In this document: positions 314-53,921 of the stretch, piece by piece
Layout: each line of letters starts with the position of its first letter
How positions within the stretch are numbered: position 1 is the first letter of the stretch
NCBI GenBank assembly: GCA_048013815.1
Contig: CM106585.1
Coordinates: 22,382,001 to 22,446,000, forward strand
Source: Setoptus koraiensis
Taxonomy: Eukaryota > Animalia > Arthropoda
Direction of reading: 5' to 3'
DNA: 64,000 nucleotides
Program-made: the position numbers and the translations under genes
Notes under the pieces: model-generated
Told to the model about the DNA's origin: nothing
What the model saw: only the letters and a program-made list of their open reading frames with translations
Databases searched by the model: none

Positions 314-3300
314 GTGAATCTCGCTACTTAGGCCGTTATATTGGCGCCTTTCCCATAGGCTCCATTCACAGTGTTAAAGGTAACTATACTATTTATATAC
401 AATAATGATTGATTTTCACTTTTTTATTTCACTTTCGATTGATTCAAAGTTTGAAATTCAAACTTTGAATAATGCAACACAAGAGCCCGTCAATGGCGCT
501 TGTATCGTCAATCATAATCATAACTATCCATTATGAGACACGATACTTGGCCCTCGTCTAGTGCTGGCTCATTGTGCTCTATGGCCATGAACACTAGACA
601 CTAATAATAATGCACTCTTGTCTCATTGTACAACCCGTCGTCTGTGTCCGTGACTAACAATTTGTTATCCACACCAACGAACAAAAAAAAATTGTTTTGT
701 TTTGTATTAAGGTATTGCATTTGCCGCAAACGATAGGCAAATCTTCATCCAGGGATTCAACTACGACGGTTCGGGGCCCGACGCCTTCTTTTGGGCGGGC
801 ACATCCGGCGGGCCAAGTCCCAATGGATTCATGATACCCGATGAGCTTGGCAGGTAACGTATCGGGCGCAACATTGAGATTAGATTGAGCGACATTTCAA
901 TTACAACTAATTATAACTATCTATTTTATAATAATTAACGCTCGATTAATTATGACCGATTGTTGCAACAATTTTTGAATTTGGCTTGCGCAGAACTATC
1001 AAGTTGGGCCCGTACCAGAACCAGGACATTTTGTTGACGTTGCCCCAGGGCAGAACCATTCGTGATATCAAATGGATCTCTATTTGGTGTCGTTTGTTTC
1101 AAGCAAACTTTGGCCATATAACTATACCGTTGAATTTCGAGCCGCCCGTGCCCCTAAATCTTGGTCCGCTGCCATCGTTTGCGCACAAAACCCGGGCGGA
1201 TTCCGTCATGATTGAAGGTAACTATACACTCATGCTATTCACACCGAGCCTGACATCATGTCACTGACATGACCAACATTGTTGGACATTTCCAGCAATC
1301 AGTGCCAAATGGTCAATTAGATTAGACCTGCCTGCTGCACATTCGTTTACAGCAACGCTGTAACGGCACTCACTGACCAATTGACTGAATCCGTCTAATT
1401 GATACCGATGATTTTTGTTCATTTGCATCACGACAGATATAAAGACGTTACGCATCAGAAACTTGTTCTACGACGGAGCCGCGCCAGGTAAGTCAAGCGA
1501 TTGCAAGTGTTCAACTCGACCATCATGACACAATGAGAACAATACTAATCGACCCAAATCGATTTGCCAAATGTCCACTATACTGCTGCCACTTCCGGTC
1601 ATCCACATGCAACAATATGTATCTCTATTTTCATGCATGCGTCATGTTATCATTATCATTATTATTATTATTACTATTATAATTGTGCTAATTTGCAATA
1701 TTTGTTTCAAACTAAATAGACGCCTTTTTCCTGGTGGGCACTGGCTCTAGCCCGCATTCGCGCGGAACCAAAGTACCCGACGAGAACGGAAGGTACGCCA
1801 ATCTCAAACACTATCTCTGATTGTTTGGTTCGAAAGTCGGCACCGGCCAATGCTGACTTGTGCCGACTTTCGCCACGACAATAAGAGTTGCGACCACAAT
1901 ATGAGTGTCTAATTATGTCTAACGATGACTAATTATTATCCAACTATCCGACTCGCCCCCTTGTGTCTGCGACAACACGACAGTCTCACCAAACTGAAGG
2001 GCTACAACGGCAAGGACATTGTGCTCCGACTTCCGTCCAATTTGACCGTCAACGACATCGAATGGTTCGGTCTGTATTGCATACATTACGAGGAAAACTT
2101 TGGTCACGTGAGAATACCCCGCAACGCGAACGTGCCCGCCGACACAAAGTTGATCATGACCGCGGTAAGTTGCGTCGATTGGCACGCCATCTGCCGCACA
2201 ATAATGTCTCGGAAGTCGCTAAAATGTCATAATATGATTACTGATGACCAATTCTAATTGATCGTTCATTGACATTCAATCGACTCATGAATGTAGGTGT
2301 CCTCTTTTGCCAATTGCGAGGTCATTTTTCCCGACATCATGCAAATGGGCGCCAACAGCAAACAAACGCCCATGGAGGGCGCACTGCAGGTCAGCTGGGA
2401 GGTGAGGCAACCGGACATTTACATACAGTTGGAGGCCCGCGTCAATCCGGACCGTTACGTGTCGTTCGGTATAAGCGGTGATGTCAGTTCCACACAGATG
2501 ATTGGGGCCGACGTTGTGCTGGCTTATTTTGATTCTAAGATGCGCAGAGTGCAACTGATAGACTACATGCTGACAGACAAGTCACAGTGCGCCCCGCAAA
2601 CGGGTTCCGGTTCGTGTCCCGATCACATATTGCGCGGAGGCCGACAAGACAGCGAATTGTTGAGCTCCAATTACATAGATGGCGTTCTCAAGGTTGTGTA
2701 CAGACGCAAATTGGACACGGGCGACGACGTGGCAGACAAAATATTTGACCTCATTAGACCGATGGTAGTTGTGGCCGCCGTGGGCAATTTAAACAGTCAC
2801 AAGGAGGCCGGATATCACAGTGTGGCGGTGACAAGCGCCCGCCAGGCGCCCATTGAGATACATTTTGGGCGCGTGATGGCGTCGCGGGGCAACTGCAAGC
2901 CCATGCTACAATCGGGCAACCAATTGTCCGCTATGATGATGCCCACACCCCCATCCATGGGCAATGTTCCGGCCATGTTGCATAATCACAACGCTCACAT
3001 GATGAACATCAACAGCAATTTGGGCATCGGGGGAGCCGTTGCGAATCAGCGCCAGTCGTCGGCCAATTTGTTCGCGAGTCCCACGCTCAGCAACAGGCAA
3101 TCGGCCCAATCGATACAGAGCCCGTGGCAGCAACCCGTTCTGGAAAACACAAACACCTTCAGGGTTGTCATTGGGCCGTCGGGCGGCGAGCGCGGCTACA
3201 CGGCCCTCACGGGCATACAATCGTGGGGAATAGCCTACTGGATCAACAACAAACTCATACCGGTGCTCAGGGTTAAACGGGGCCAAAACTATACGTTTAT

Positions 3301-3793
3301 TGTGCAAACGGGCAAAAATCCCCAACGGCAGGCCAAATATCATCCGCTGTACATTACGAATCATCCGGAGGGCGGCGGCGGCCAGCGGCCCGACGAACTG
3401 AGATCGGCCACGCATCAAGTGTACGCGGGCATCAAGTTTATACCGGGCCGGCCGCCCGACGCAAGTCCGGGCGCGGGCAGATACTGCGAACTGGAGGCGC
3501 GCGACATTGACAGATCTAGCGAAAGTGACAGCGTCGACACCTATAGGGACACACTAATTGAACGCTGCGAAGACGGAACACCGGCCCGATTCACGTGGAC
3601 ACCCGACGACAACACGCCCGACATTGTGTATTATCAGTGTTTTACGCATAGGAACCTAGGATGGAAAATTCTCGTTTCGGGGGCCCGATCGTCGTTGCTG
3701 TCGGCGGCAACAAGTGCGCCCCTATGGTGGCTAATGGCAAGCTTGCTGATGGCAACATTCAACGGGCTAATTCAGTTCAAGGTGGTGACGTAA
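314..3793 (+). CDS. knk: Knickkopf/Skeletor-family cuticle protein (2x DM13 + DOMON + C-terminal conserved domain + GPI-type tail); signal-peptide exon not located
   Basis: GT-AG exons read in frame: 314-379, 712-853, 994-1217, 1437-1487, 1720-1792, 1984-2164, 2297-3793. DM13 motifs (FNYDGSGPDAFFWAG...PDELG; WISIWCRLFQANFGH; FYDGAAPDAFFLVG; WFGLYCIHYEENFGHV), DOMON (YVSFGISG...MIGADVV), WGIAYWINNKLIPVLRVKRG, YYQCFTHRNLGWKI and a hydrophobic C-terminus. knk versus Skeletor paralogue not resolved. Confidence 0.88.
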
Positions 3794-6700
3794 TTCTAGG
3801 CTACGAAGCTGGTGATCTCGTGGCCTAGATTATGATAATGGCATCACCGTGGCTTGTTTGTGTTGCCTCTGAATTGTTTGTCGTGTTTGTTGTCGATGTT
3901 TGCGGCCTGGCCGCCAGGGGCGCGCTAATCGACGACATCCGACCACTCACTGTGTACACAATGTACCCGCACGAAAGAGTATGTGTTATAAACATTGTAC
4001 AATACAAATAATATCTCGGCCGCTACTTGGCCGGCCTTTATACCCACCAGCCTTTATACCCGCCAGCCTTTAAACTCACCTGTGGTCGCTACCTGTTTAG
4101 TTCACTCTTCGGCTCGGCCGCTTTGCGGCTGACCTGCCGTCGCTTTGGGGCCAGAGACCCTAGTGGCCATTGTGGCAACTATTCTATCAATGTTTGGATG
4201 ACAATTCGATCGCAAGTTGACAATTGTTGTCGTTGTCGGGCCAGGCGAATTGGCCTCCATTTGGCGCTAACATCAACCGAGCCAAGCGACTCGTTTGATT
4301 CGTAATTCGAGAACAAGTCACCAATTGTCAATTTTAAGTCGCCAGCTCGCGGCTAGATGGTGCTGCGAACTGCGCACAGTTATTTCGTCAGCCGGTTATT
4401 CGCACCTAGTTGCGGGCCGCACCAAGACTCACAACAAACTTTGTTCAACAAACTTTGCTGAACAAAGTTGATACAACAGTTGCAATGTACAACTGCTGAT
4501 GGAACGGGTCGGGGAGGCTCGCAACAAACAACGGGCGCATTGGGCGACAAAGGGCAACTGGTGGCACCAGTACAATGGCTGATTGTGTGGTTGCCGATGC
4601 CGAAACCAATTCATTGAATGAACGCAGCCACCATCAATGCACGCCGACTTGCTGGCGCCTCGACGACTTTGCACGTGCCCAAACGCGTCTGCTAACACCA
4701 TTGCCGCTGTCAGAACAATGTTGCCTGCTAGAACGTCGCTTCGAACGCTGGCCGGTTGGCAGCGAATTCGAGCGGCGCTCAGATTCGAATTCGAAGGCGA
4801 GGAGCGTCCGAGTTGGAACGACTAATTGTAACGCGCTCCCAACTGGAGACAACTGAATCGTTGTGGCCGGGCCGGGCGGCGCACAGAGGCCAATTGGCAA
4901 TTCGAACACAGCGCCAATTGTCTGTGCCGACCGGCCCTGGAGCCGGGCCGACTGTCTGGCGGCCAACAGAGCGGCCAGACAGAGTTTAAAGTTTAAACTT
5001 TAAACCAAAGTCGCCAGCGACTTCAATTGTTCTTTGCTGCCTCTGCTGCACTGTTCACTTCTCGCTGGCGCTGGCTGGCCTTCTCTCCACTTGCTTCACT
5101 GACCACAACGGCATAACAAGAGCGCGGCCACATGAGATGACCACTGCACGCACAATTTATCCAATTGAACCATTATCTCAATCGTGTTGCTGCAGTCGCA
5201 TACTTTGCTGTTGGCGGACAATGCTGCCGTTGTTGTTGGCCTTGTTGCTGTTGTTGATGCTTATGGTGGTGTTGTTGTCGTCGTCGTGGTTGTTGTTGGT
5301 GCCCAAGCCGGCGCTGCTGTTTTCATGGTCGCCAGCCAGTGACGCCAATTGCCGCCTACAAACCGCCACCACAGCGCCAGTTACACACATAAACATTACG
5401 ACTTGCGTTGCCACGCCAGCATCGTGCACAGAACGTTCACTCGGCAAGCCGTGCATGTGGAAATGGCCGCCGACCATGCGCCGACCATTTCCATTGGAAG
5501 TGCGCCCCTTTCGTTGGCACGCACGGAGCAGGCGCACGTTCTGTGCCCGCGTGCGGCACACACGCGCCTTCTATTGGAGAGTCTCCATTGGAAACTACAG
5601 TCACTAGACGCGGCTTTAGTGTGAAAAGTTGATTGAAACACCCCAGAGAGGGACAGAGAGTGGCACCAATAATTTATTCATGCCTCTCCTTTATTCTTTA
5701 TCTGCTGTCTGGCGGCTCTCGGTGCCAGTGTCACTCTCGTTGCGAATCGTTCCATCGGCATGGTCTCCACGGATATCGTATATATATCGTAGTATATACA
5801 GTATGGATTCCATCATACATACACTATTCGCCCATCACTGGCCCAGTGACACTGATACTCACTTGGCGAGTCGCACACGGGGTCCAGTTTACGGTGCACG
5901 CTTGACGACTGACTGAGAATTGTTAGATTGCCAAAGTGAAATGTTTGCAAAGCCACTGCTGCAGCCATAGAGACGAGCACGGGCAAGATGCAAATGGGCC
6001 AGAGTGCAATGCGAGGCGACATGGGACACTAAAGAGTCTTTAGTGAGGAGTCTCCAGTAGAGCGACTCTTTAGCAAAGAGCCAGCAGACAGTCGTTAAGC
6101 GCCAATCTAATAATGATATCCCTACTATATACACTATGCGGCCTACAGTATGGACACACTTGCAAAAGAATACATTTCATCAACATTTCGTCAACATTTC
6201 GTTGTGTGCTGCTGGCCCACATCAGCCTATATTGCACAAAGAACGGCCCGTGTCCGTGTGGCTGTTGCATGCGGATATGCGACATTCGAAGCCGCATTGA
6301 TCGCCCATCGATGCAGCGGCCACACCACACCATACTGACACGTTATACAGTGCCCACCAACATGGCCACACGTTGTTGGCTATTTGTTGCTCATGCTATT
6401 ATGCAACCACAAAAATACATGTACAACAACTCCCATTGTGTATGTCCATTCGAACACCACATCTGAGCAGACCTCAATCCGCTGTCTCGGCATGCAACTG
6501 GCCAGCGCGAACAGTGCCGTTTTCGAATCACTTTGTTGGTGGATATTCGAAGCAATGCGCATCGGTGTCACAGCGACAGAATGCTCAGAAACAAAACAAG
6601 AATCTAGCCAATCAATCGACTCGTTCGAATCGAGTCATCGGGGGTTCAATCCATGCCAACGCACCGTTTCATCGTCTATATTTCGTCGTCACGTATTGTC

Positions 6701-6917
6701 GATATAAGCCAACAAAAGGTAATAATTGACGAAATAAGCCAATAATTGTATGGGCGAAATTGTGCGGCCAACAGACGCCTGACCACCGCGACACCAGACA
6801 GCGCCAAAACAACAACAACAACAATCTGTGCCGACTTTCTTTGTGTTGTTTGTCTGTGCAAGTTGCCAACAATAGTTAATGGGCGCCCTGTACTATCGGC
6901 GCAACACTTTGTGGAGT

Positions 6918-7620
6918 TTTGTGTGTGTGTGTGTGTGTGTGCATGCATTGGAATTAAAGAGAGTGATTGGGTGTGCTTATCTATCTCTGTTTGTGTCTGT
7001 CTCAATCTCTCTCTGTCTCTCTCATTATTTCATTATTATTATTATTACTACTATTACCACTATTACCACCATTACCTACTACTATTATTATTATTATCGT
7101 CGTCCGTATTATATTTTGTTTTGTTGTTATTGTATCGTCTCATCGGCATCGTCGGCATCATCGGCATCACACCATCAGCATCGTCGTCGTCGTTTCGTTA
7201 GTCATCGCCGTCGCCATCATCACACAACCATTCGCTCCAATTACCAACTCAAGATACAACACCAACAAATGAAGTTAGCCATCCAGGAGCTGCTCAATCG
7301 GCGAGCTTGTGTTTTTATTCTGCTATTATTATCATCATCACTATCATCACTACATTATTATTACTATACTATTGGCCAGAATCAATGCACAATGTGTTCA
7401 GTCAACAACAACAACGGCACCGCAACAATCGTTCATTGATGCCAATACCATTGGCACAAAATCATACTCCTCTACACTCACCACAATATTAATAATTCCA
7501 AGAATTACTATTACTGTTGTTGTTATCGATTGTGCCTACTCGTAGACTAGACTCACATAGACACCAACACACACAAACACACACCTTTACACACACACAC
7601 TAGCCAGATTAGCATTATTA
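6918..7620. repeat. Compound microsatellite zone (TG)n, (TC)n, (ATT/ACT)n, (CATCGT)n, (CA)n
   Basis: Directly visible simple repeats; ORFs across it are poly-Y/I/H artefacts. Confidence 0.85.
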
Positions 7621-7800
7621 TTATTGATTAGTGGTGTCACATTGCATCATCGCCACTTTTGTAACAATTCAACCTTAACAACAGCAATAACAACAACTAC
7701 AATATCAACAACAACAGCAATTACATCAAGCCAGCAACCAATCAGGCAACCAAGCCAGCTACCATAACTGTAAAACAGATATACTGTACTGGCCACCATA

Positions 7801-8549
7801 GTGGATGTCGCAATGGAAAAAACGGAGTGGATGATTGGACAGAAGGTCAAATCAAAATGGATCAGACAGTATACAAACGCAAACAAATTCTCGCATTTAG
7901 ACATAAACACATGGATTGAGATGCAAGAGAAATATATATGCGAAATTTGCCAGAGAGAGCTACTCAATCAAAACGCGTTAAGATTGCACAAAAGCACACA
8001 TGCCATAGAGAGATCGTTTCGTTGTGACCCATGCGGGGTATCCTTTAGGACAAAAGGTAAGTCCATCAATGATTCACATCACAGCTTGCTGTTGATGCAT
8101 ACTACCTTTGCAACTATTGTCCCAATCATTCATTATAATAATCACGTTGCTTTGTTATTATCTTGCCAAAACCGATTATAGGTCATTTACAGAAACATCG
8201 CCGGAGCACTGCGCACGAGAACAAAGTCACCATGAGTCAAGTATTTGGTATGCCTACAAGTGATAACCCACGCCCCTACAAATGTAAAGAATGCGATATA
8301 TCCTTCAGAATACATGGACACCTTGCTAAACATCTCCGCTCAAAAATGCATATAATGAAAATGGAATCCAATGGTTACATTCCCAGAGGCTTCTATGCCG
8401 AGATAGAGAGGTCCGGTATTATCATTAAAGATCGCATGGATACAACAGATTGCGAACAAAGCCTTAAAAGTTTACAATCTATAGCCCTAACTTTGCCAAA
8501 TTTAATTGTAGATAACCATCATCATCAGCCTACTAGTGCTGACAGTTAG
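7801..8549 (+). CDS. shn: Schnurri-like C2H2 zinc-finger protein, C-terminal triplet; 5' end unresolved
   Basis: Exon to 8056 (AG|GTAAGT), exon 8182-8549. Reads YICEICQ...LRLHKSTHAIERSFRCDPCGVSFRTKGHLQKHRRSTAH...NPRPYKCKECDISFRIHGHLAKHLRSKMH...YAEIERSG...DTTDCEQSL, matching the recalled insect Schnurri ZF6-8 region. Confidence 0.85.
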
Positions 8550-8831: not shown

Positions 8832-9215
8832 TTAGCCCAACAGGCCCAATCTGAAGACGTCGTGTTCGACATAATAGGTGTTGTTGGCCGCTTTTAGAAC
8901 AAACACCTGGCTGAAACTGAGGGGAGGGTCGTCGTCGGTCTTCAATTGACCGAATACCATAACAACAACACCACCATCAAATGTTGGTTGACAGTCCACT
9001 GTTGTTATTTGATGTTTAATAGTCTGAAATGTCAGTGCTCCAATTTTTTCCATTATCTTTGCCCTTCCCATAAATTGATCACCTTGAAATGTTAGTAGTG
9101 AATTTGTTTCACTATAAAAGTTGGCCACTCCGGCCCTTTGGGCAGCTCCTCCATCGAATAGTGTGTAATACTGGTTGACAAAAGTCTCACCAATAGTGGC
9201 AAAATTTGGATTCAT
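8832..9215 (-). CDS. NTF2: Nuclear transport factor 2 (RanGDP import factor), intronless CDS
   Basis: IGETFVNQYY...LLTFQGDQFMGRAKIMEKI...ITTVDCQPT...GQLKTDDDPPLSFSQVFVLK...HDVFRL. Probable 5'UTR intron (donor CAG|GTGAG near 9595, acceptor just before the ATG). Confidence 0.95.
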   Translation of the reverse strand: MNPNFATIGETFVNQYYTLFDGGAAQRAGVANFYSETNSLLTFQGDQFMGRAKIMEKIGALTFQTIKHQITTVDCQPTFDGGVVVMVFGQLKTDDDPPLSFSQVFVLKAANNTYYVEHDVFRLGLLG

Positions 9216-51851: not shown

Positions 51852-53921
51852 ATGCCCCGAGCATTTCTAGTCAAGCGCCACAGCAGCAAGTCGGCCCATC
51901 ATTCGTCGTCGTCGTCGTCGGCAAGCTCGTCCCAAGCGCCCAACGCAACACCCAATCTAGCCCAGCACAGATATCAACAGCATGGTGCGGCCGGCAACAA
52001 ATGCGCCCAACCGCTGCCCGCCATCATTGGGCAGCCAAAATATGCGGGCACCTCGTCGTTGCTGATAACGACACCGCCGAGCCGACAGCAGCACCAAGGC
52101 AACAACAACAATGCCAACAACAATTCTAACAGCATCAATAGCGCCGCCATTGCAAATGATCAACAATACAACAGAATAGGACATCAATCATCGGCGAAAA
52201 ATCTTGCCCTCATTTGCTCGGCGCCATTCATTAGACCGTCAGCGAAAAATCTAGCCACCGTTGCTAATATAGCGGCTAATCAGAGGTCAGTCAACGCGGC
52301 TATAGCGGCTGCACAATCAACAAACAACGACAAAAGTCATGTTAATGGATCGCAAAAGTCCAACTCAAACATATCCTTCAGTCAGGCCTCGCCGGCTTCC
52401 AATAATAAAACTCATTCTAGTCCTTATCAATCTGGTCAACAAAATACAAAACAATCCAGCAATGTTTCCAAATTACAATCAAATCGCCAAGATCATCATT
52501 CTAACGGCAATAAGTCAGCAACTTCTAAAATAAACAATAATAATAAATCAGCTAACCTTAACAAACAACAGGGCAGGAGCGCGTCTATTAACAATAATAA
52601 AACAGTCAAAGCTACAACCACTAAACAGTCGTTGACTAATAAGCCCAATTTACCGGCCGTCCGTCGCAATGCACAAGCGGATATCTTTGGACAGACAACT
52701 ACAAGCAACAAGCGGCCAAGGATTCAGTTGGTCACTAAACGAACCTCAAGTTCGCCATCAAAGAAGTCACCCAAGGGTCCAGCGACCAAGAAGGCCAAAA
52801 CAAGTACCACACCAGACATACCCAATGCGGCTAAAGCAGCAGCTAATGCTAATTTCACTTTTGAAACATTTTTCAACAGCGATGGAAGAAGCAAGAGAGC
52901 AAAACTCAATCAACAACAATCGAAGACTGGTAAATCTTCAGGTGAGCCGAGTGAAACAAAATCTGCTACTGCGAAATCAAGCGAAGTATCCGGATCACCA
53001 GCAACTAAGGGACCAGTTGTAACAGCTCAAATAGTTCCAGCTCCAGTGATAGCTTCGGTATTGGGAGAGTCTAATAAAACTCGTTACACCTGTACAGAAT
53101 GTGGTAAAAATTATGCCACCTCTTCAAATCTGTCTCGTCACAAGCAAACTCATCGTAGTTTAGATTCACAATTAGCCAAAAGATGTCCCCATTGTGGCAA
53201 AGTTTATGTTTCTATGCCAGCATTAGCCATGCATATACTAACACACAACCTTAATCATCAATGTCATGAATGTGGCAAAGCATTCTCTCGACCATGGCTA
53301 TTGAACGGTCATATGAGAAGTCATACAGGCGAGAAACCGTTTGGTTGTGAGCATTGTGGCAAACAATTTGCTGATAGATCCAATCTCCGAGCTCACATGC
53401 AAACTCACAGTTCACTGAAGGTGTGGAAATGTCGCCGATGCAACAAGCAATTCGCTCTGAAATCATACTTGAACAAACATTACGAATCATCTTGCTACAA
53501 AGATGGTGGAGCCCCAGACCTCGATGATGATTCAGACTATCTTGGGCAATATCAGCAACAAGTACCCCATGGAATACTTATAGTCGATGGACGAAGTAGT
53601 AGTGGTAGAGCACGCTTGAGTAGCATACAAAGCTCCACTTCCGGTACCCCAGGAGGTCGTACCATCAGATTTAAAAGTATCGACGACTCTCACGACGAGG
53701 ATGACTCATCGGACGAGTCTGATCCTGAGTTGAAACGCATCAAGCGACGGGTCAGTTCGAAGAGCAAAAAACAAATTCAGCCACCACCATTGAGAGCTGG
53801 GATGTTGCGCAACAGGGAAAAGTTGCGTCCACCGAAGTACCACCAAATGGACGGCGGTGACTACGATGATGGAGAGGACCAGGAACATGATCACCATAGA
53901 AAGAATACTTCGGAAATATAA
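51852..53921 (+). CDS. scrt: Scratch (Snail superfamily) zinc-finger repressor, intronless
   Basis: N-terminal SNAG MPRAFLVK; Scratch-domain-like FTFETFFNSDGRSKR; five fingers incl. CTECGKNYATSSNLSRHKQTHRSLDSQLAK, VYVSMPALAMHILTH, AFSRPWLL, FADRSNLRAHMQTH, FALKSYLNKHYESSC. Confidence 0.95.
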   Translation: MPRAFLVKRHSSKSAHHSSSSSSASSSQAPNATPNLAQHRYQQHGAAGNKCAQPLPAIIGQPKYAGTSSLLITTPPSRQQHQGNNNNANNNSNSINSAAIANDQQYNRIGHQSSAKNLALICSAPFIRPSAKNLATVANIAANQRSVNAAIAAAQSTNNDKSHVNGSQKSNSNISFSQASPASNNKTHSSPYQSGQQNTKQSSNVSKLQSNRQDHHSNGNKSATSKINNNNKSANLNKQQGRSASINNNKTVKATTTKQSLTNKPNLPAVRRNAQADIFGQTTTSNKRPRIQLVTKRTSSSPSKKSPKGPATKKAKTSTTPDIPNAAKAAANANFTFETFFNSDGRSKRAKLNQQQSKTGKSSGEPSETKSATAKSSEVSGSPATKGPVVTAQIVPAPVIASVLGESNKTRYTCTECGKNYATSSNLSRHKQTHRSLDSQLAKRCPHCGKVYVSMPALAMHILTHNLNHQCHECGKAFSRPWLLNGHMRSHTGEKPFGCEHCGKQFADRSNLRAHMQTHSSLKVWKCRRCNKQFALKSYLNKHYESSCYKDGGAPDLDDDSDYLGQYQQQVPHGILIVDGRSSSGRARLSSIQSSTSGTPGGRTIRFKSIDDSHDEDDSSDESDPELKRIKRRVSSKSKKQIQPPPLRAGMLRNREKLRPPKYHQMDGGDYDDGEDQEHDHHRKNTSEI

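What the first reader, a model, noticed from the sequence alone, without database searches (positions are those of the whole stretch)
3800..8549. Possible mini-Schnurri: only the C-terminal zinc-finger triplet
The gene at 7801-8549 encodes the three fingers and downstream helix that match insect Schnurri ZF6-8, the part known in Drosophila to mediate Mad/Medea silencer complexes. Insect Shn is ~2500 aa with two further finger pairs, yet only ~4 kb separates this exon from the knk stop and none of the supplied ORFs there contains a recognisable C2H2 pair. The locus may encode a naturally minimal BMP-pathway cofactor, or one half of a split schnurri.
Basis: partly seen in the sequence, partly recalled or inferred. 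Interest (0 to 1): 0.7.

Follow-up and report, generated by a model that had tools for sequence, protein, structure and literature searches.

The report
Miniature Schnurri gene in gall mites
This eriophyoid (gall-mite-type) genome, like at least six related mite genomes, encodes a roughly 200-residue version of the normally 1,200-3,100-residue BMP co-repressor Schnurri. It keeps only the three zinc fingers that in flies dock onto Smad proteins, so it is a natural test of how little of Schnurri is needed.

Summary
A two-exon gene on the + strand (CDS 7813-8056 and 8182-8549, GT..AG intron 8057-8181, about 203 codons) encodes three intact C2H2 fingers plus a confidently folded helical extension. 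Its best full-coverage relatives are the C-terminal ZF6-8 region of arthropod Schnurri/HIVEP proteins.

The rest of Schnurri is absent from the 64-kb window. There is no finger pair, no other Shn-like segment even at E<=10, and no N-run.

Six related mite loci from different sequencing runs carry the same small gene in compact, non-syntenic neighbourhoods. Each has the same start codon context and an in-frame stop 4-28 codons upstream. In one relative a divergent synthetase gene starts only 650 bp away.

The only named short relative is a 196-aa Aceria tosichella protein, mislabelled E4F1. Other mites (oribatid, trombidiform), ticks, horseshoe crab, crustaceans and insects have long forms. Synonymous sites are saturated while dN is 0.02-0.44, so the gene is under purifying selection.

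So a lineage-wide mini-Schnurri is well supported. I found no paper describing this.

The parts
7813..8056 (+). Exon 1 CDS of mini-Schnurri: start ATG (gcaATGG), N-terminal 40 residues, finger ZF-a (=Shn ZF6) and the first half of ZF-b
   Evidence: ORF and sequence. The conserved start aligns with P0001, P0002, L003 and P0105. In-frame TAA at 7771-7773, 14 codons upstream.
7843..7872 (+). Conserved pre-finger motif K-[VIL]-K-[SA]-[KR]-W-[IT]-[RK]-[QS]-[YF]
   Evidence: Present in all eriophyoid-type sequences. Aligns loosely with a K..EF[IMF]P block about 25 residues before ZF6 of long Shn proteins. dN 0.024 against saturated dS for L001/L005 exon 1.
7939..8001 (+). Finger ZF-a (C-x2-C-x12-H-x3-H), counterpart of Shn ZF6
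   Evidence: Regex scan; alignment A1/A3.
8057..8181 (+). Intron (125 nt, GT..AG, phase 1) inside finger ZF-b between 'FRTKG' and 'HLQKH'
   Evidence: Sequence. Same position in L003/L004 and L011; absent in L001, L005 and L009. Absent in Dinothrombium and Medioppia long genes.
8182..8549 (+). Exon 2 CDS: second half of ZF-b (to 8216), ZF-c (8283-8351), helical extension (about 8343-8492), short non-conserved tail, stop TAG 8547-8549
   Evidence: AlphaFold2 model of this exon's product gives pLDDT 86-94 over residues 31-100, with a beta-hairpin and helices 44-52, 54-62, 70-77, 81-84 and 90-103.
3794..7812 (.). About 4 kb between the knk-like stop and the mini-Schnurri ATG: no detectable coding, RNA family or Shn-like sequence; presumably promoter, 5'UTR and regulatory DNA
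   Evidence: No Pfam hit for 10 ORFs; no Rfam hit; no tblastn hit from 12 long Shn proteins at E<=10 other than noise; no conserved peptide shared with the relatives' upstream regions; only short microsatellites.
2297..3793 (+). Last large exon of the upstream knickkopf-like gene (DOMON domain, C-terminal hydrophobic tail), same strand
   Evidence: Pfam DOMON E 2e-20; ORF end.

Best explanation
The locus is a complete, stand-alone, two-exon gene for a roughly 203-residue 'mini-Schnurri'. This is the eriophyoid-mite orthologue of the Dpp/BMP co-repressor Schnurri (HIVEP family). It has lost everything upstream of a short conserved pre-finger motif and everything downstream of the helical extension that follows the last finger. 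What remains is the ZF6-8 module, which in Drosophila is the part that binds the Mad-Medea trimer on GRCGNC(N5)GTCTG silencer elements.

Shown here: the gene structure, the orthology of the triplet, and conservation of the short form across at least seven eriophoid-type genomes plus one Aceria protein. Also shown: purifying selection, absence of other Shn parts in the window and in up to 10 kb upstream in relatives, and long forms in all outgroups.

Inferred: the protein still docks on Smad-DNA complexes. It would then either recruit co-repressors through its conserved N-terminal motif or helical extension, or block activation by occupancy. The shortening probably belongs to the general genome and protein streamlining of Eriophyoidea.
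For: Gene model and intact fingers.

Orthology:
- Exon 2 alone hits fragments named HIV type I enhancer-binding protein, and a Habropoda Shn C-terminus, at 60-69% identity.
- An exhaustive search with the intronless relative P0001 gives alignments over residues ~24-175 only to the C-terminal region of 1,200-3,100-aa proteins. These are named HIVEP3, zinc finger protein 40 or schnurri in Anabrus, Pediculus, Homarus, Macrosteles, Glossina, Ixodes, Tachypleus, Dinothrombium and Medioppia.
- Those proteins carry the canonical ZF1-2, CCHC and ZF4-5 fingers as well.

Short form is lineage-wide:
- L001/L002 178 aa, L005 184 aa, L009 180 aa (intronless).
- L003/L004 and L011 have the same intron as the window.
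- P0105 is 196 aa, Aceria tosichella, UniRef A0A6G1SER5.
- All have ATGG with a purine at -3 and an in-frame stop 4-28 codons upstream.

No room or trace of the rest:
- In L003 a divergent tRNA-synthetase gene starts 650 bp upstream of the ATG.
- tblastn of 8-12 long Shn proteins finds only the triplet in the window, L001, L003 and L004.
- The same search finds ZF4-5 and other Shn segments 1.5-3 kb upstream of the triplet in the non-eriophyoid control locus L006.

Selection: dS saturated, dN 0.02-0.44.

Fold: ZF-c plus helical extension at pLDDT 86-94.

Function in flies: ZF6-8 bind the Mad-Med-SE complex without ZF1-5. Flies with ZF1,2,4,5 destroyed are viable and fertile (PMC10853822). ShnCT, the 637 C-terminal residues, recapitulates repression (PMC9508838 and PMC3738585).
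Against: A 5' coding exon spliced in between the upstream stop (7771) and the ATG (7813) is therefore not excluded for the window.

The Aceria entry is taken to be transcript-derived only from my own recollection; the tool shows only that it has no contig on record.

Fly ShnCT is three times longer than this protein. From my recollection of Pyrowolakis et al. 2004, not checked here, it contains a repression region outside ZF6-8, so docking without repression is possible.

The rest of the genome could not be searched, so a separate gene for the finger pairs may exist.
Confidence: 0.8

Rival explanations
1. Split Schnurri. The mini-gene is real, but the N-terminal part (ZF1-2, CCHC, ZF4-5) survives as a separate gene elsewhere in eriophyoid genomes, so the ancestral functions are divided between two proteins. 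This is compatible with the gene model above and differs only in what was lost.
For: Nothing positive. The finger pairs are very conserved across animals, so complete loss would be unusual. Absence could not be tested on the whole assembly.
Against: Two word searches with the acariform ZF4-5 pair, covering candidate lengths 275-2,235 aa, listed no Aceria or other recognisably eriophyoid protein. Only the best 120 of 205 and of 941 hits were shown, so this is weak. In flies the pairs are dispensable for viability, so loss is plausible.
Confidence: 0.2
2. These are simply the last two exons of a normal long schnurri gene. Its upstream exons would lie beyond the knk-like gene or outside the window, with knk nested in a long intron.
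For: Fly shn is a long gene with large introns. The window holds only 7.8 kb upstream of the fingers. AG dinucleotides exist between the upstream stop and the ATG. No reads could be laid.
Against: Same conserved Met, Kozak context and upstream stops in seven loci. In L003/L004 the next gene upstream is divergent and starts 650 bp away, and 10 kb of dense genes upstream hold no Shn segment. The 15-billion-protein collection holds no long protein with an eriophyoid-type triplet: the only hit above 51% identity is the 196-aa Aceria protein. No conserved coding sequence is shared between species upstream of the ATG. The knk-like gene sits on the same strand with its own terminal exon.
Confidence: 0.07
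3. It is not Schnurri but another small C2H2 factor, for example E4F1 as the Aceria homologue is labelled in UniRef, or a decaying gene relic.
For: UniRef names P0105 'Transcription factor E4F1'. Pfam sees only generic C2H2 fingers below or near threshold.
Against: All alignments that span fingers plus helical extension are to Shn/HIVEP C-termini, and none of the looked-up relatives is named E4F1. The H-x5-H fingers and the 'KHLRSKMHIMK.E..G..P.G.YAE.ERSG...TTDC..SL.SL' extension are shared column by column with Shn. Saturated dS with low dN, intact ligands and intact splice sites argue against a relic.
Confidence: 0.02

Closest known systems
Drosophila Schnurri (Shn), C-terminal ZF6-8 module / ShnCT fragment
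   Same: Three C2H2 fingers in the same order and spacing (x3 then two H-x5-H fingers), the same linker lengths and the same conserved helical segment after the last finger. Identity to arthropod Shn C-termini is 45-65%. In flies this module binds Mad-Medea on silencer elements.
   Different: The natural protein is about 180-203 aa, against about 2,500 aa for fly Shn and 637 aa for the engineered ShnCT. It has no ZF1-5, no long low-complexity regions and no C-terminal extra fingers. It starts about 40 residues before ZF6 and ends 10-45 residues after the helical extension.
Vertebrate HIVEP1/2/3 (Shn1-3, ZAS proteins)
   Same: Same family. The H-x5-H 'KHLRSKxH' finger type resembles the second finger of the ZAS pairs; the PDB 1bbo finger matches at 52% over 27 residues.
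   Different: Vertebrate proteins have the two finger pairs but lack ZF6-8 (PMC10853822). The mite protein is the exact complement: ZF6-8 without the pairs.
Long Schnurri of other Acariformes (Dinothrombium tinctorium RWS12450.1, 1,566 aa; Leptotrombidium deliense, 1,739 aa; Medioppia subpectinata and Oppiella nova, partial >1,270 aa)
   Same: Closest long relatives by taxonomy. The triplet and extension are 54-66% identical.
   Different: They keep ZF4-5 about 400-560 residues upstream of the triplet, which lies within a long exon (>600 bp of uninterrupted tblastn match, Dinothrombium and Medioppia only). The eriophyoid genes have nothing there.
Aceria tosichella A0A6G1SER5 ('Transcription factor E4F1')
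   Same: Same short architecture, 196 aa, 62% identical to window exon 2, and starts at the same Met.
   Different: Carries a database name that my comparisons do not support. No paper found that discusses it.

Membership tests
Schnurri (arthropod Shn) orthologue | C-terminal triplet ZF6-8 with the conserved post-finger helical segment | tested here: met
   Alignments A1-A3; tblastn E 1e-36 to 6e-39; best full-coverage hits are proteins named HIVEP, schnurri or zinc finger protein 40.
Schnurri / HIVEP (ZAS) family | Two widely separated C2H2 pairs (ZF1-2 'AKPSVLQKH', ZF4-5 'KKPSMLKKH') plus a lone CCHC finger | tested here: not met
   None in the gene, in the 64-kb window, or in up to 10 kb upstream in relatives. 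The control locus L006 and all long proteins show them. The whole genome was not searchable.
Schnurri / HIVEP (ZAS) family | Very large protein (>1,200 aa) with long low-complexity regions | tested here: not met
   About 203 codons here and 178-196 aa in relatives.
Schnurri (functional definition) | Forms a ternary complex with pMad-Medea on GRCGNC(N5)GTCTG and represses transcription | not testable with these tools
   Known for fly ZF6-8 and ShnCT. It needs EMSA or reporter assays with the mite proteins.
E4F1 (name given to the Aceria homologue) | Closest relatives over the full length are E4F1 proteins | tested here: not met
   All full-coverage hits that were looked up are Shn/HIVEP; none is named E4F1. 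No direct comparison with an E4F1 sequence was run.

The most novel reading that the evidence does not exclude
Eriophyoid mites have discarded the whole ZAS/HIVEP part of Schnurri, with no finger-pair gene anywhere in the genome. The remaining 180-200-residue protein is then a self-sufficient Smad co-repressor. The ZF6-8 module would dock on Mad-Medea silencers, and the conserved K-x-K-S-R-W pre-finger motif or the four-helix extension would supply repression. That would make it the smallest natural Schnurri and define the minimal functional unit of BMP-dependent silencing.
Probability: 0.35. Interest if true: 0.7.

Novelty: new variant of a known kind. Interest (0 to 1): 0.55.

Why it matters
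Fly genetics had to engineer fragments (ShnCT, finger mutants) to ask which parts of Schnurri matter. Here evolution has done a harsher deletion and kept the result under purifying selection across a whole superfamily of mites.

If the mini-protein still silences Smad targets, it defines a minimal BMP co-repressor of about 180 residues. It would also give a small, foldable module (fingers plus helical extension, with no solved structure) for structural work on the Smad-Shn-DNA complex. If it only docks, it shows how a co-repressor can be turned into a competitive modulator.

It is also a clear, datable example of protein miniaturisation accompanying genome streamlining in Eriophyoidea, and it corrects a database name (E4F1).

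Tried and rejected
There is no transcript support for this species.
- Every search, alignment, dN/dS calculation and fold used exon 1 (7813-8055) and exon 2 (8184-8546) separately by reference, or used naturally intronless relatives (P0001, P0105).
- Upstream exons in 3800-7800: Pfam on 10 ORFs, Rfam, low-stringency tblastn with 12 long Shn proteins, and tblastx/blastn against the relatives' upstream DNA were all blank or noise.
- Split-gene test: two word searches with the ZF4-5 pair and look-ups in the scan's notes gave no eriophyoid finger-pair protein. The lists are truncated and mostly unnamed, so I draw no conclusion. One divergent hit (P0354) comes from a run (SRR26903790) not linked to the mite loci.
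- Origin by 5'-truncated retrocopy versus in-situ loss: the ZF-b intron is shared by the window, L003/L004 and L011 but is absent from the Dinothrombium and Medioppia long genes. It does not decide the question.
- Fold search of the exon-2 model against the PDB: only isolated fingers matched, all with E>2.
- I first misread an out-of-frame TAG at 7799-7801 as the upstream stop. The in-frame stop is TAA 7771-7773.
- No contig looked human, and nothing was withheld for that reason.
Full report
**What is in the sequence**

On the + strand two overlapping ORFs (7801-8181 and 8163-8549) are joined by a canonical intron. The donor is AAAG|GTAAGT at 8056/8057 and the acceptor is TTATAG|GT at 8181/8182. 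The intron is phase 1, inside the codon for the Gly of 'FRTKG|HLQKH'.

The coding model is ATG 7813 to 8056 plus 8182 to 8549 (TAG), 612 nt, about 203 residues. It encodes three C2H2 fingers with all ligands intact:
- 7939-8001 (C-x2-C-x12-H-x3-H);
- 8023-8056 plus 8182-8216 (H-x5-H);
- 8283-8351 (H-x5-H).

Pfam sees only generic C2H2 models near threshold.

The flanking genes are a knickkopf-like DOMON gene ending at 3793 (+), NTF2 at 8832-9215 (-), eIF6, and a histone-fold gene. The window contains no N.

Each was searched, aligned and folded on its own by reference.

**Is it Schnurri?**

Exon 2 alone retrieves 84 short proteins, mostly exon-sized fragments, at up to 69% identity. Some are named 'HIV type I enhancer-binding protein', and one is a Habropoda Shn C-terminus.

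I ran an exhaustive HMMER search with the intronless relative P0001. Apart from poly-finger proteins that score through many stretches, it returns a coherent set in which residues ~24-175 align in one piece to the C-terminal region of 1,200-3,100-aa proteins. Looked up, these are:
- HIVEP3 (Anabrus, Macrosteles);
- 'immunodeficiency virus type I enhancer binding protein' (Pediculus, Ixodes);
- zinc finger protein 40-like (Homarus);
- unnamed proteins of Glossina, Nilaparvata, Tachypleus and Cyprideis;
- unnamed proteins of the mites Dinothrombium tinctorium and Medioppia subpectinata.

The same proteins appear in a search with the ZF4-5 pair, alongside entries named 'zinc finger protein schnurri' or 'shn'. 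They show the canonical finger map: ZF1-2, a lone CCHC, ZF4-5 (KKPSMLKKH) and the triplet.

Column-by-column alignment shows the mite fingers, the linkers and the post-finger segment 'HIMK.E..G..P.G.YAE.ERSG....TTDC..SL.SL' to be shared with those proteins. The UniRef label 'E4F1' on the Aceria homologue is not supported by any of this.

**Is the rest of Schnurri nearby?**

No. A six-frame regex scan finds fingers only in this gene and in a snail-type array at 53.1-53.5 kb.

tblastn with 8 and then 12 long Shn proteins hits only 7903-8115 and 8145-8513, plus non-specific hits on the snail fingers. At E<=10 everything else is noise with E>0.8.

The method does detect upstream parts when they exist. 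In the non-eriophyoid control locus L006 it finds the ZF4-5 pair and further Shn segments 1.5-3 kb upstream of the triplet.

The 4 kb between the knk-like stop and the ATG has no Pfam, Rfam or conserved-peptide signal.

**Comparative evidence for a stand-alone small gene**

Earlier notes of this scan call the genome a mite of eriophyoid type. My own test agrees: the nearest named relative is Aceria tosichella.

The assembly's size and two pieces would fit a genome like Setoptus koraiensis (47 Mb, two chromosomes; PMC11920263). That is only a guess.

Six related loci from different sequencing runs carry the same gene:

| Locus | Run | Product | Intron |
|---|---|---|---|
| L001/L002 | SRR10674624 / SRR10674652 | 178 aa | none |
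| L005 | SRR27355166 | 184 aa | none |
| L009 | SRR33927335 | 180 aa | none |
| L003/L004 | SRR27556032 / SRR33927342 | not computed | same position as window |
| L011 | SRR29668662 | not computed | same position as window |

A JGI metagenome contig (L010) carries a further exon 2.

Neighbours differ between species:
- a tryptophanyl/tyrosyl-type tRNA synthetase downstream in L001;
- a divergent class-I synthetase upstream in L003, whose start lies 650 bp from the ATG;
- a glutaredoxin gene downstream in L009.

So the small gene is not being carried along as part of a larger conserved unit.

All seven loci start with ATGG and a purine at -3. The next residues are conserved: M-[ED]-x-T-E-K-[IV]-K-S-R-W (window: MEKTE..KVKSKW). 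Each has an in-frame stop 4-28 codons upstream.

The only short protein among the true orthologues in the 1.8-billion-representative library is the 196-aa Aceria tosichella entry A0A6G1SER5, which begins at the same Met. It has no contig on record, which fits a transcriptome-derived entry. That it comes from a transcriptome assembly is my recollection and was not verified here.

No long protein with an eriophyoid-type triplet (>51% identity) exists in that library.

**Selection and fold**

Exon-wise Nei-Gojobori estimates give saturated synonymous divergence: dS is undefined, or 2.8 for the closest pair. Against that, dN is 0.02-0.44. This includes the pre-finger N-terminus, with dN 0.024 for L001 against L005.

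AlphaFold2 on the exon-2 product with nine aligned sequences gives pLDDT 86-94 for the last finger and a compact extension of four helices. The half-finger, the linker and the tail are disordered. Foldseek finds nothing in the PDB beyond single fingers.

**Phylogenetic placement of the event**

Long forms occur in Trombidiformes (Dinothrombium 1,566 aa, Leptotrombidium 1,739 aa), Oribatida (Medioppia, Oppiella), ticks, a spider, horseshoe crab, crustaceans and insects. The truncation is therefore derived, and so far specific to the eriophyoid-type clade.

The intron inside the second finger is shared by three eriophyoid-type lineages and lost in three. That fits the massive intron loss described for Aculops lycopersici (PMC7738191). 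The intron is absent from the Dinothrombium and Medioppia genes. It therefore does not tell whether the short gene arose by in-situ loss of upstream exons or from a 5'-truncated copy.

**Mechanism**

Shown in flies: Shn binds the Mad-Medea-silencer complex through ZF6-8, without apparent involvement of ZF1-5. Vertebrate HIVEPs lack ZF6-8. Flies with ZF1,2,4,5 inactivated are viable and fertile and still repress brk (PMC10853822). ShnCT, the last 637 residues, supershifts Mad-Med on silencers and recapitulates repression (PMC3738585, PMC9508838).

Inferred for the mite: the mini-protein keeps the docking module and therefore most likely still joins Smad complexes on silencer-type sites. Whether it represses actively, through the conserved K-x-K-S-R-W motif or the helical extension, or passively, is unknown. 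I give about 50% to active repression.

**What stays open**

- Whether a separate gene keeps the finger pairs. Two word searches and the scan's notes gave nothing usable.
- All biochemistry.

**Novelty**

Full-text searches found no paper linking schnurri to mites in this sense. Neither the Aculops genome paper nor the Floracarus preprint mentions schnurri or HIVEP.

I rate this a new variant of a known kind. It is of moderate-to-good interest for BMP signalling and for the biology of genome miniaturisation.

Noticed in passing
window:48694-48709 (-): Single exact match to the fly Mad-Medea-Schnurri silencer consensus GRCGNC(N5)GTCTG (GACGCCTCGTTGTCTG). It lies in the intergenic DNA between the start of the DEPDC5 gene (about 48183, - strand) and a SNAG-domain snail/scratch-type gene (51852-53921, +). 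Expected 0.06 per window; 6 of 100 shuffles reach one match, so it may be chance.
   Followed up: partly
window:51852-53921 (+): Single-ORF 689-aa snail-family gene: MPRAFLVKR SNAG start, five C-terminal C2H2 fingers at 53091-53495, and a long low-complexity middle.
   Followed up: no
UniRef A0A6G1SER5 (P0105), Aceria tosichella: The database name 'Transcription factor E4F1' looks wrong. The protein aligns end to end with the mini-Schnurri family and with Shn ZF6-8.
   Followed up: yes
L001:1-2000: The first 2 kb of this related mite contig are very GC-rich, with long overlapping Arg/Ala/Pro-rich ORFs on both strands, unlike the rest of the contig. This could be a chimeric assembly end or a repeat.
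   Followed up: no
window:8057-8181; L003:9895-10021; L011 about 590-700: The intron inside the second finger is at an identical position and phase in three eriophyoid-type lineages. It is precisely absent in three others, and also absent in the Dinothrombium and Medioppia long genes. This is a small case study of intron gain or loss in this clade.
   Followed up: partly
window:6800-7620: The last 1 kb before the gene is AT-rich with strong C-over-G skew and several microsatellites (AAC, TG, ATT, TAT, AC). These give long spurious low-complexity ORFs on the + strand.
   Followed up: no
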